This document shows positions 37,707-64,000 of a DNA stretch of 64,000 bases, in pieces. The stretch's first letter is position 1. Each line of letters starts with the position of its first letter. The stretch lies in assembly GCA_037379345.1 (NCBI GenBank), contig CM074516.1, forward strand, positions 372,001 through 436,000, in the 5' to 3' direction. The position numbers and the translations under genes were made by a program. A model generated the notes under the pieces. It did no database searches. It was not told where the DNA came from and worked only from the letters and a program-made list of their open reading frames with translations. The DNA is from Perna viridis. Taxonomy: Eukaryota.

Positions 37707-37896
37707 GCTGGCATACAATATAAAGGTATTACAGACTAACAGAAACTCCCTACAGCAGGTAGATAGTACACTTGATGGATATATCAATTGGATGAAAGGT
37801 TTGGAGAACAGTTTCGCTCGTCTTGTCTCAGAAACCAGTAAACCTGGAGTACTGGAGAATGACGAATTGTGTAAAGAATATCTGGAACAGTTTAAG
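37707..37896 (+). CDS. DMD: Dystrophin exon T (exon 55 equivalent), LAYNIKVLQ...YINWMKGLENSF...KEYLEQFK
   Basis: cctgttttag acceptor, AAG|gttggt donor, 190 nt, phase 2-0. Confidence 0.92.
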
Positions 37897-57084: not shown

Positions 57085-57135
57085 ATGTTGGTTTTATCTT
57101 TGAACCTCCGAAACCTACTTAATTACTTTGAGAAG
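57085..57135 (+). CDS. Putative Dp116-like alternative first exon, MLVLSLNLRNLLNYFEK
   Basis: ATG-initiated 17 codons ending at a consensus AAG|gtaagt donor in phase 0, in frame with exon U. Confidence 0.45.
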
Positions 57136-58878
57136 GTAAGTCAATTGTTAACATTGCTTGTCTCTATAGTAAGGTATCATATTGAACAGTAAAATTGGTC
57201 CTATTTCATTTCTTCCCATTTTCCAGGAGAATGAAAAACTAATATGAATAGAAAATACTCAGTGGTTGTCCATGGTTACTGATAGGTGTTGATATTTACT
57301 GCTGACCAAATTTAACCATAAACAAACATTTATTTCTTTTCTTTTGAACATCAGACTCATCTTTATTAGTCCCCTACCAGCTTTTGCCGAAGGGGACTTT
57401 AAATTCACCGAATTTTGTCTGAGTTGTGGCCTTTGAATTTACCGAAATTTAAGTTTTCTGCACTTTTTTCTTGGTACTGTATTTGAGTCTACCTTGATGA
57501 GTTACAGATCAAGTTAACATTTTTTTCTGGTTTGCTGATATTTTCCAACTTTCAGTTTTACAGGCTATACCAAAATTTCAGTTTTACACAGTTTTTTCTA
57601 AAGACTTAAGATATTGAGTTGTTTTTTTTTGACAAATCAATCAACCTTTATTTGAAACCTAAGGCTACAATTAGGTACAGAATAATGGAAAGTTATCAGG
57701 AAGTAACATGACGCAAAGAGAATGCAAAATAACAAGAAATGTCCCTGATAATTATTTCGAAAACTTCAACGACGTCTGAAAATATATCAAAGAGGATTGG
57801 AAGTACATATAATCTTTACTGAATGAGAACCTCACAATGTAATCAATGTCTTCCCTTTTACTTTTGTCCCAGACTCAGCAATAAGAAAATGCCAGAATTT
57901 TATTTTAAAGAATAAATGCATTTATGGTTCAAAACACACATGAATAATTAATTTATTCATTTTAATGATAAATTTTATTTCTAATATATAAGAATATTTA
58001 AGGATCTCTGCTGATGCATGTTCTGTTTTATTTACAATTAAACCTATTACTCGTCAAAAAGAAACGCTGTGCTTACTTTTAGGTAATGCCTACTCTATTT
58101 ACTCCATGCCAAGATACTCTTATGTAAAATAAAAATCAGTTGATTTTGCATTTGGTCTGGAAAAAAAACTCTTCCTATTTGAGCTTTACTATAGCCTTCA
58201 ACCCCCTATTCCTATTTGAGCTTTACTATAGCCTTCAACCGCCTACCTTGTACAAATAAACCACATTATTAACTTCATTACTACATGTTGTACCTTCATT
58301 TAGAATGAAATTGATGGCTTATATCAAATTCACCATCAATCTTAAATACATTATTTATATATATATATATGTAATTTATTAACATGACCATGAACTAAAT
58401 ATTAATATGTGCCTTCAATTAATCCAATTTTCTTTAATGGATGTAGATTTTGTGTGATTACCTAGTTCAGCTGTTCTTGGCTGTGATACTGTGCCTCATC
58501 AACGGTTCTTTTGTTTTACACTGAAACTAGAATTTGTAAATTACATCTTCTTTGAAAGGTTCTGACCATATAAGGAATTTTTATTTAATTGCAGTTGCAG
58601 GATTTATTGCATCCTTTTGTTGATATATACAGAGCTGTTTGTGTTGTATGATTAAGTTCCACTTAGAGTAAGGGCCAAAATTTATGTTGATAAAATAAAT
58701 TATACATATTCAGAAACATAAAGGGGGTGATGAAACTTGTAAAAAGGAGTATTGTTTTGTAATCTTCTCACCCCCTGTAATGACCTCTGTCATCTGCCTG
58801 TATGTGTATGTCAGTTATTCATCTGTTAGTGTTTGTCAGTTATTCATATGTCAGTGTCAGTCAGTGTTTGTCATCTGA

Positions 58879-62569: not shown

Positions 62570-62739
62570 GACCTTCAAGCTGAAGTTGATGCTAACAAAG
62601 GAACTTATGATTCATTGAACACGGCCGGTAATCAGCTGACAAGAACCATGGTTGCTGCAGATGCTCAGCGATTACAGAAAAGACTTGAAGAGATGAATCA
62701 ACGTTGGATCAATCTAATGACCAAATCAATGGAAATCAG
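62570..62739 (+). CDS. DMD: Dystrophin exon U (exon 56 equivalent), DLQAEVDANKGTYDSLN...LQKRLEEMNQRWINLMTKSMEIR
   Basis: ctttcttttcattatag acceptor, CAG|gtactt donor, 170 nt, phase 0-2. Confidence 0.95.
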
Positions 62740-63460
62740 GTACTTGTACTGTAGACAATTTGTACTTTATTGGAAAAAGATGTGTATTTATAAGTTCTAA
62801 TCTTGAAAAGCAGCTTTTCCCTTTATTATGTGAGTGGATGCTAAAATAAGACTTTTCTCCCTTTTTGTGAGTGAATGCTAAAATCAGGAGTATTCTGTTA
62901 GTAAATGACAAAAACTTGGAGGGACTTGTGGTTTAATTATAGTTATCTTGAGAAAACATTTAGTATTAAGTGTTTTCAAAGGATACAATTCTAGATATTT
63001 TAATCTCCAAAACTTAAATTTATCAACATATTTCTGTCTTTACAACCCAAACTTCCAAACCTATGTACACAGATATAGGTAGGTGTCTCTTTATCTACCC
63101 TCATGAAGTAACGTCATATTTTCAAGGATTAATTCATGATCACATAATTTTCATGTCTGGGAATTAATTAGTGTGAACATTATCAAGGTGTCACCTTCCC
63201 AGTAATTATCAAGGCAGAGATAATAAGGATTTATTTGGGAACATTAAGTTTTATACAATACAAACTGAGCTCTCATTAGCTATGGTTTATATTGTGTTTT
63301 TTTCCTTATGTAACTGTGCTTGGGATTGCTATTAAAGTCCTTAGTAGAGGGATATTTTTGTTTTTTTTATTGTCTTTTGCAAAATGGAAAATTAGTTTGT
63401 TGAAAAGGATTAGATTCGTCTCAGTGATTCTAAACCACTGAAGTAATAATTCTGTGAGAA

Positions 63461-63753
63461 ATGAGAGTAATAGCATTAGTCGGACATCAGGATGATACCC
63501 AAAATGGGAATAATCATAATTGCCCTAGTGATGGAAAGTCTTCATGTGAATGTACAACAATCCAAAGTGTTGATAAATGTTCTGTTTATGGGGAACCAGA
63601 TTATATCAATATATATGGCCATAGAAGGACTCTTTCTGAGCCAGAGTTATTTGTGGCTGTCGTTGGGCAGTACTCTAATAAGACAACAAGTGTTGAACAT
63701 TTGAATAAGTGTTATAGTCTTTCACCAAAGAAGAAGAAGAAAAAAGTTCATTG
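63461..63753 (+). CDS. Putative alternative first coding exon of a short dystrophin isoform (unique 98-aa N-terminus)
   Basis: ATG preceded by an in-frame TGA (63455); 97 non-repetitive open codons; ends CAT TG|gtaggc in phase 2, the same phase as the host intron; motif-rich peptide. Confidence 0.65.
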
Positions 63754-64000
63754 GTAGGCTGACTAATAGTAAACTTAGATCTTTGGACAATATTTTAATA
63801 GATGCTTCAAATCTTTTGGTTTCCTTGTTTGGTTTTCATATTACCGTAAAGAGTGACTCTGTCATCGTCGTCCACTTTTCATGCAATAACTTGAATATTA
63901 TTTGGTTGATAATTATAAAAAGATAATATTTAATTAGAATGTTCCAAACCACAAAAGAAAGGTTAGTATTGATTTTGGGGTTTATGACCCAAACTGTTTT

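What the first reader, a model, noticed from the sequence alone, without database searches (positions are those of the whole stretch)
63461..63757. Candidate short dystrophin isoform with a signalling-motif N-terminus (14-3-3, NLS, PP1 RVxF) starting in the intron-56 equivalent
Seen: a 98-codon non-repetitive ORF 720 nt after exon U. An in-frame stop lies just before the ATG and there is no pyrimidine-rich acceptor. It ends CAT TG|gtaggc in phase 2, which is the phase needed to join the next dystrophin exon (exon 57 equivalent). The peptide contains DYINIY (YxN SH2-type site), RRTLSEP (RxxSxP, 14-3-3 mode I), SPKK (CDK consensus), PKKKKKKV (SV40-like NLS) and KVHW (RVxF PP1-docking consensus) at the junction. 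Known: dystrophin genes make short C-terminal isoforms from intronic promoters, but the classical vertebrate ones lie in introns 29, 44, 55 and 62, not 56. Inference: a lineage-specific isoform that fuses a phospho-regulated, possibly nuclear, PP1-recruiting module to the last spectrin repeats and the WW/EF/ZZ region. If unspliced, the donor reads TGG TAG and gives a free-standing 98-aa ORF.
Basis: partly seen in the sequence, partly recalled or inferred. Interest (0 to 1): 0.85.

Follow-up and report, generated by a model that had tools for sequence, protein, structure and literature searches.

The report
Conserved mussel coding exon inside dystrophin intron
A 98-codon reading frame inside a dystrophin intron is a real protein-coding sequence kept by selection in several mussel lineages, and it fits a short dystrophin's first exon, but no RNA from it was seen, so it could also be a small separate gene.

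Summary
The ORF exists exactly as described: 63461-63757, ATG start, TGA two codons upstream, single copy, not repetitive. Its length alone is not unusual, since the window holds 27 ORFs of 90 aa or more.

What makes it real is conservation. Intact ORFs of 98-115 codons, all ending ...PKKKKK[KR]VHW plus a stop, occur at the same place in at least four deep lineages: after the exon-56 equivalent and before the exon-57 equivalent, on the same strand. Synonymous sites are saturated (pS about 0.77) while pN is 0.13 in the C-terminal half. A non-coding block of about 120 nt, 210-330 nt upstream, is also conserved.

RNA reads fix the next dystrophin exon at C6:439939. Its first base is G, so TG|G reads Trp and stays in frame, here and in a deep-sea mussel.

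However, three RNA-seq libraries carry 60 reads on the normal exon-56 to exon-57 junction and no read on the ORF or from its donor.

My reading is a first exon of a lineage-specific short dystrophin (about 0.5) against a free-standing nested small-protein gene (about 0.3).

The RxxSxP, polybasic and [KR]VHW motifs are conserved. SPKK is not, and YxN only partly.

The parts
62570..62739 (+). Dystrophin exon U (exon-56 equivalent), 170 nt, ending in phase 2 (ATC AG|gt).
   Evidence: Sequence and translation DLQAEVDANK...SMEIR. RNA reads join its last base to C6:439939, with 11+31+18 reads plus an 11-kb transcript contig. It is 98% identical in protein in the relative's contig L016.
63133..63251 (+). 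Conserved non-coding block (CNE1), 210-330 nt upstream of the ATG. The core is GAATTAATTAG..CATTATCAAGGTGTCACCT, followed by TAATTA, AGATAA and ATTTGGGAAC. It is a candidate promoter or enhancer of the ORF exon.
   Evidence: It aligns to L016:789-907 and L021:520-648 at 67-75% identity, while the rest of the intron is at background, 33-41%. Its function was not tested.
63455..63457 (+). In-frame TGA two codons before the ATG.
   Evidence: Conservation of the peptide begins exactly at Met1 in all lineages.
63461..63753 (+). Coding part of the candidate first exon: 97 codons plus the TG of the split Trp codon. Read as a free-standing ORF, the coding part is 63461-63754, followed by TAG at 63755-63757.
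   Evidence: Orthologous ORFs of 98-115 codons occur in at least 4 deep lineages. pN is 0.127 against pS 0.774 in the C-terminal half. The first 8 residues are identical despite 7 synonymous changes. Only this frame is open in all lineages.
63754..63759 (+). Donor-like GTAGGC, which read in frame is G + TAG stop.
   Evidence: TTG|GTAGG(C/A) in three lineages and TTG|GTAATG in the fourth. No read uses it.

Best explanation
The ORF is a real protein-coding exon. So far it has been found only in mussel-type bivalves. It sits with its own conserved upstream control element in the dystrophin intron between the exon-56 and exon-57 equivalents.

The most likely mechanism is as follows. An internal promoter near 63130-63460 starts a transcript whose first exon encodes about 98 residues. 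This exon is spliced from TG|GT at 63753/63754 to the exon-57 equivalent at C6:439939. The product would be a short dystrophin with a unique N-terminal segment fused directly to the start of the last two spectrin repeats, followed by the WW/EF/ZZ/coiled-coil region. That layout resembles Dp116, DRP2 or Drosophila Dp205.

The N-terminal segment is predicted to be mostly disordered. It carries three short hydrophobic strands and conserved linear motifs: RxxSxP, a polybasic PKKKKK[KR]V, and [KR]VHW at the junction.

Shown: the coding constraint, conserved position, frame compatibility and conserved upstream block. Inferred: the promoter activity, the splice and every motif function. Expression must be restricted, because the exon is silent in the RNA sampled.
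For: (1) Orthologues: P0002/P0003 (100 aa), P0007 (99 aa), and P0008 and P0010-P0012 (110-115 aa). All start M-x-x-IAL[VI]G and end PKKKKK[KR]VHW.
(2) Selection: pS is 0.77-0.80 (saturated) against pN 0.127 in the C-terminal half. Third-codon positions carry 25 of the 41 differences there.
(3) Conserved position and strand: the exon-56 equivalent lies upstream in L016, L030 and L031. The exon-57 equivalent lies 2.46 kb downstream in L021.
(4) Frame: exon U and the ORF both end in phase 2. RNA joins exon U to C6:439939. That exon starts with G in the window species and in L021, giving TG|G = Trp and then GRLESNAEQW.
(5) A conserved upstream non-coding block, and A at -3 of the ATG in all three lineages aligned upstream (sp1-sp3).
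(6) GTAGG follows the TG in three of four lineages, and the last 8 exon bases GTTCATTG are invariant, including a fourfold site.
(7) Dystrophin genes are known for intronic promoters with conserved coding first exons. Drosophila Dp205 has a unique N-terminal domain plus two spectrin repeats (PMC1790709, PMC2840664, PMC5664101).
Against: There is no RNA support. Depth on the ORF is 0 in X4-X6 (5.4 Gb read), against 7-17x on the flanking dystrophin exons. There is no joint from 63753. At 60 canonical junction reads, the donor's use there is below about 5%.

The 17 further runs of this species that the tool guessed to be RNA (it warns they may be DNA) hold none of its words.

Every database protein stops at ...VHW, and none continues into dystrophin sequence. 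However, clustering and length limits could hide long isoforms.

The donor is weak by the usual consensus (+4 G, or +5 T in one lineage). The stop after Trp and the GT are each implied by the other, so they do not discriminate. About one ORF in four or five would end NNG+T.. and so be phase-compatible by chance.
Confidence: 0.5

Rival explanations
1. A free-standing nested gene. An intronless or separately terminated transcript within the dystrophin intron encodes a small protein of about 100 aa. The protein is largely disordered and ends at Trp with a C-terminal polybasic [KR]VHW motif. It could, for example, be a small phosphatase-docking or nuclear regulator. Its position is conserved only because the host intron cannot be broken.
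For: All lineages have a stop codon directly after Trp, TAG three times and TAA once. All database proteins are 98-115 aa. Conservation ends at the stop. The donor-like site is weak.
Against: There is no RNA for this form either.

The only hint of a discrete unspliced transcript of about 3 kb was six contigs with the same ends, finishing about 22 nt after an AATAAA. That hint fell away when one of those runs proved to be a seawater DNA metagenome (PMC9357000).

A sense-strand transcript carrying a GT at its stop, with a strong acceptor 2.5-4.2 kb downstream, would tend to be spliced.

The phase match with exon 57 would be a coincidence of about 0.2-0.25.
Confidence: 0.3
2. The first coding exon of some other nested multi-exon gene, or of a dystrophin transcript that joins a different downstream exon.
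For: The donor-like GT is conserved. A second conserved non-coding block lies further down the same intron.
Against: A translated comparison of the whole intron with four other lineages found no further coding-like conservation between the ORF and the exon-57 equivalent. No reads support it.
Confidence: 0.12
3. A chance ORF in AT-rich intron DNA with no coding function.
For: ORFs of this length are common in the window, 27 of 90 aa or more. No Pfam family matches. No RNA was seen. The structure model has low confidence, with mean pLDDT 43.
Against: The same frame is open, with the same start and end, in at least four lineages whose synonymous sites are saturated and whose surrounding intron is unalignable. 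The other two frames hold 4-20 stops.
Confidence: 0.03

Closest known systems
Dp116 (DMD exon S1 in intron 55), G-utrophin and DRP2
   Same: All are N-terminally truncated dystrophin-family products that keep the last two spectrin repeats and the WW/EF/ZZ/coiled-coil region. They are made from an intronic promoter with a unique coding first exon conserved across species (PMC1790709, PMC5664101).
   Different: The exon here lies one intron further downstream, after the exon-56 equivalent rather than before it. It would therefore join exon 57 at the very start of repeat 23. It encodes about 98 residues rather than a handful. It has no detectable relatives outside the mussel lineages found. The transcript has not been seen.
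Drosophila Dp205, Dp186 and Dp117
   Same: These are invertebrate short dystrophins with unique N-terminal domains conserved among related species. Dp205 keeps two spectrin repeats (PMC2840664).
   Different: No sequence relation was found. The Drosophila isoforms are experimentally established, whereas this one rests on comparative sequence only.
Sea urchin SuDp98
   Same: An invertebrate short product arising from a promoter in this part of the gene (PMC1790709).
   Different: SuDp98 arises in the intron-55 orthologue and uses an internal initiation codon. Here a dedicated coding first exon is proposed, in the next intron.
Small RVxF-type phosphatase-1 docking proteins, such as inhibitor-3/PPP1R11 (recalled from my own knowledge)
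   Same: Short, largely disordered, with a polybasic run directly before a [KR]VxW motif and a cysteine cluster.
   Different: The order of the elements differs. No Pfam match was found. Binding was not tested. This is a resemblance only.

Membership tests
Short dystrophin isoforms from intronic promoters | Lies in an intron of the dystrophin gene on the sense strand | tested here: met
   It lies between RNA-verified exon U (62570-62739) and the exon at C6:439939. The EF-hand_2 exons of the same gene lie downstream on the same strand.
Short dystrophin isoforms from intronic promoters | The first exon has its own ATG and ends in the phase of the next constitutive exon | tested here: met
   A TGA lies upstream of the ATG. 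TG|G + GGA CGG CTG GAG is in frame here and in L021.
Short dystrophin isoforms from intronic promoters | A transcript exists that starts in the intron and is spliced to the downstream exon | tested here: inconclusive
   Depth on the exon is 0 and there is no joint from its donor in three RNA-seq libraries and one transcriptome assembly. The tissues are unknown. The exon is silent there, so donor use could not be judged.
Short dystrophin isoforms from intronic promoters | The coding first exon is conserved among related species | tested here: met
Dp116 / G-utrophin first exon (orthology) | Position in the intron-55 equivalent, joined to exon 56 | tested here: not met
   The ORF lies after the exon-56 equivalent. 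The intron-55 equivalent is the 24.7-kb intron 37897-62569. It is therefore not filed as a Dp116 orthologue.
RVxF phosphatase-1 docking motif | [KR]-[VI]-x-[FW] after basic residues, conserved | tested here: met
   KVHW or RVHW is present in all lineages. This holds at sequence level only.
RVxF phosphatase-1 docking motif | Binds the phosphatase-1 catalytic subunit | not testable with these tools
   No phosphatase sequence could be used without joining exons. No complex job was sent.
14-3-3 mode I / basophilic kinase site | R-x-x-S-x-P, conserved | tested here: met
   R56-T-[LY]-S59-[ED]-P61 is invariant at R, T, S and P. Phosphorylation was not tested.
Classical monopartite nuclear localisation signal | Run of at least four basic residues of the form K-[KR]-x-[KR], conserved | tested here: met
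   PKKKKK[KR]V is present in all lineages. Localisation was not tested.
CDK site S-P-x-K | Ser-Pro conserved | tested here: not met
   The Ser is Pro or Gly in all other lineages, and Pro in another allele of the same species.
Grb2-type pYxN site | Tyr-x-Asn conserved | tested here: inconclusive
   DYIN in three lineages and DFIN in the fourth.

The most novel reading that the evidence does not exclude
Mussels have evolved their own short dystrophin. A promoter in the intron after exon 56 would add a 100-residue, phospho-regulated, polybasic, phosphatase-docking head directly onto spectrin repeat 23. This would give the dystroglycan-binding end of dystrophin a signalling or nuclear function not described for any dystrophin isoform.
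Probability: 0.15. Interest if true: 0.65.

Novelty: new variant of a known kind. Interest (0 to 1): 0.45.

Why it matters
If the splice is real, it adds a lineage-specific internal promoter to the dystrophin gene at a new position. That would extend the pattern that the region around exons 55-57 repeatedly gives rise to two-repeat short dystrophins. The new N-terminal domain has conserved motifs that give directly testable partners.

If the ORF is instead a separate gene, it is an unannotated, selection-maintained small protein hidden in a giant gene's intron. Gene finders miss that class of gene.

Either way, the case shows that comparing raw contigs from other sequencing projects can rescue a real coding exon for which no RNA is available.

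Tried and rejected
- Pfam on the ORF and on all eight orthologues: nothing meaningful.
- Rfam on 62700-64000: only a sub-threshold SECIS-like hit at the exon U donor.
- Paralogues in the genome: none.
- Profile search of 1.84 billion representatives: only two more orthologues and one spurious bacterial repeat protein, P0009.
- JGI metagenome contig scan with the alignment: no confirmed locus.
- Protein Atlas: unavailable on both tries.
- AlphaFold2 with the 8-sequence alignment: mean pLDDT 43, pTM 0.18, only three short strands (4-6, 48-53, 64-69). No fold search was made on it.
- Six equal-ended contigs L023-L028, ending about 22 nt after an AATAAA, looked like an unspliced 3-kb mRNA. I rejected this because run SRR13892607 is a seawater DNA metagenome from a mussel-covered cold seep (PMC9357000). 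The common ends are therefore assembly breakpoints.
- A 500-nt block downstream of the ORF, shared by two other lineages, has no match in this genome apart from a short core.
- Search for further coding exons in the intron by translated comparison: none.
- No complex prediction was sent, because no phosphatase or 14-3-3 sequence was available without joining exons.
- The ORF was never joined to the exon-57 equivalent for any search, fold or pattern.
- Earlier scan notes by words: nothing.

Full report
**The observation**

The window is G000:C6:372001-436000. The ORF at 63461-63757 is there as described:
- It has an ATG start, 98 codons and a TAG stop.
- An in-frame TGA sits two codons upstream, at 63455-63457.
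- No pyrimidine tract or AG acceptor precedes the ATG.
- It ends CAT TG|GTAGGC.

Exon U is 62570-62739, 170 nt, and ends ATC AG|gt in phase 2. That leaves 721 nt between it and the ATG.

The ORF is single copy in the 723-Mb genome. It has no tandem repeat. An interspersed repeat family begins only at 63876.

Length alone is not evidence. The window holds 27 ORFs of 90 aa or more.

**The next exon and the frame**

Open-frame scanning of the DNA beyond the window found the exon-57 equivalent, which encodes GRLESNAEQWLHLVNTLQELISWL.... Its acceptor is cttttccag|G at C6:439939.

RNA reads confirm this. Laid on L019 (C6:434500-440250), exon U's last base joins exactly that position with GT..AG ends. 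The support is 11, 31 and 18 reads in three RNA-seq libraries, plus an 11-kb transcript contig in a fourth run.

The first base of that exon is G, so the ORF's split codon would read TG|G = Trp and continue in frame. The same holds in a distant relative, where L021 has ...tttcag|GGGACG.

My equating of exon U with human exon 56 rests on my own recollection of the human sequence, in which Dp116 starts at DLQGEIEAH. It also rests on the statements that Dp116 uses exons 56-79 from a first exon in intron 55 (PMC5664101, PMC1790709).

**Conservation is the key result**

A search of 5.8 billion proteins found a 99%-identical allele from the same species (P0001) and a 100-aa protein at 56% identity (P0002).

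A profile search of 1.84 billion representatives added P0007 (99 aa) and P0008 (113 aa). A second word-indexed search added P0010-P0012 (110-115 aa).

All of these:
- begin M-x-x-IAL[VI]G;
- share Y-x-EPD[YF]IN[IV]Y-x-H-x-RT-x-S-[ED]-P-x-LFVAV[VI]G[QE]Y;
- end SL-x-PKKKKK[KR]VHW followed by a stop.

A cysteine-rich middle part varies freely in length and sequence.

The contigs that carry these proteins are genomic. L016, L030 and L031 have the exon-56 equivalent 840 nt upstream of the ORF, at 98% protein identity. L021 has the exon-57 equivalent 2.46 kb downstream, at 92%. Place and strand are therefore conserved.

Between the window and L016:
- Synonymous sites are saturated. pS is 0.64 in exon U and 0.77 in the ORF's C-terminal half.
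- pN in that half is 0.127.
- The first eight residues are identical despite seven synonymous changes.
- Only this frame is open in all lineages. The other two frames hold 4-20 stops.

Intron sequence around the ORF is at background identity (33-41%), against 73% in the ORF's C-terminal half and 85% in exon U.

This is a coding sequence under purifying selection.

One of the carrier runs is a seawater DNA metagenome taken above deep-sea mussel beds (PMC9357000). At least that lineage is therefore probably a bathymodioline mussel. No relative was found outside these lineages.

**Other conserved elements in the intron**

A block of about 120 nt at 63133-63251 is conserved in three lineages. Its core is GAATTAATTAG..CATTATCAAGGTGTCACCT, followed by TAATTA, AGATAA and ATTTGGGAAC. 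It lies 210-330 nt upstream of the ATG. It is the natural candidate for a promoter or enhancer, but that is inference.

A second conserved block with CAnCTG and TGATAA elements lies at L006:4290-4425, about 0.5 kb before the exon-57 equivalent.

A translated comparison found no further coding-like conservation in the intron.

**Expression**

No listed holder of the stretch is on record as an RNA run. The three runs that hold it are of unrecorded kind, and at genome-sized contig totals they are probably DNA. The 17 runs of the species that the tool guessed to be RNA (it warns they may be DNA) hold none of its words.

I read three raw-read RNA-seq libraries, about 5.4 Gb in total. The flanking dystrophin exons stand at 7-17x. 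The ORF (L019:962-1258) has depth 0, and no joint leaves its donor.

With 60 canonical junction reads, use of the ORF exon in those samples is below roughly 5% of dystrophin transcripts. The tissues are unknown. This does not exclude narrow expression, but it leaves both the 'isoform' and the 'separate gene' readings without direct support.

**First exon or separate gene?**

The stop after Trp does not help. Any GTR donor after TG reads TGG TAR or TGG TGA.

Points in favour of a first exon:
- The phase match would be only about 0.2-0.25 by chance for an unrelated ORF.
- It is on the sense strand, with a strong acceptor next in line.
- GTAGG follows the TG in three of four lineages.
- The last eight exon bases are invariant, including a fourfold-degenerate site.
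- The join falls exactly at the start of a spectrin repeat.
- This gene has a known habit of making short isoforms with conserved coding first exons. Drosophila Dp205 has a unique N-terminal domain and two repeats.

Points in favour of a separate gene:
- Every database protein ends at Trp.
- The donor is weak by the usual consensus.
- Conservation stops at the stop codon.

Six equal-ended contigs ending about 22 nt after an AATAAA looked like an unspliced mRNA. One of them comes from a DNA metagenome, so I dropped that argument.

I put the first-exon reading at about 0.5, the free-standing gene at about 0.3, another splice partner at about 0.1 and chance at 0.03.

**The peptide**

There is no Pfam family. 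AlphaFold2 with eight sequences gives mean pLDDT 43 and only three short strands. These fall on the conserved hydrophobic stretches IAL, YINIY and FVAVVG. The segment is best read as a largely disordered, motif-bearing stretch.

- RxxSxP, the polybasic run and [KR]VHW are invariant.
- YxN is lost in one lineage.
- SPKK is peculiar to this allele.

Roles in 14-3-3 binding, nuclear import or phosphatase-1 docking are plausible but untested.

**Verdict**

The finding is a new variant of a known kind if the splice exists, or otherwise an unannotated small nested gene.

Noticed in passing
window 37897-62569: RNA reads entering exon U all carry one upstream sequence, with agreement 1.0 in 15 and 22 reads. 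That sequence maps to an exon ending ...GAACAGTTTAAG|gttggt at 37896. The intron before exon U (intron-55 equivalent) is therefore 24.7 kb, and nothing between 37897 and 62569 is included in the main transcript of these libraries.
   Followed up: partly
window 57085-57141: Another first-stage note (s1-751546) proposes a Dp116-like first exon here, MLVLSLNLRNLLNYFEK with a strong GAGAAG|gtaagt donor. No reads entering exon U from such an exon were reported in the three RNA-seq libraries.
   Followed up: partly
L006:4290-4425 (C6:439290-439425, beyond the window end): A second non-coding block in the same intron is conserved in three lineages, about 0.5 kb before the exon-57 equivalent. It carries CAGCTG/CATCTG E-box-like and TGATAA elements and also aligns to L021:2340-2480 and L016. 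It may be an enhancer.
   Followed up: partly
window 63876-64000 and onward: An interspersed repeat family starts here, with at least 40 copies at 76-83% identity across the genome. Most RNA reads laid on the intron downstream of the ORF are partial matches to such repeats.
   Followed up: no
L017, L018 (same species) against window 63722: An allele of the same species has Pro instead of Ser at residue 88 (YSLPPKK). This matches the state in two of the three other lineages (the third has Gly), so the window's SPKK is a derived polymorphism.
   Followed up: yes
L021:1585-2085: A tandem-repeat array of about 60-70-nt units lies downstream of the ORF in the deep-sea mussel lineage. It is absent from the window species.
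   Followed up: no
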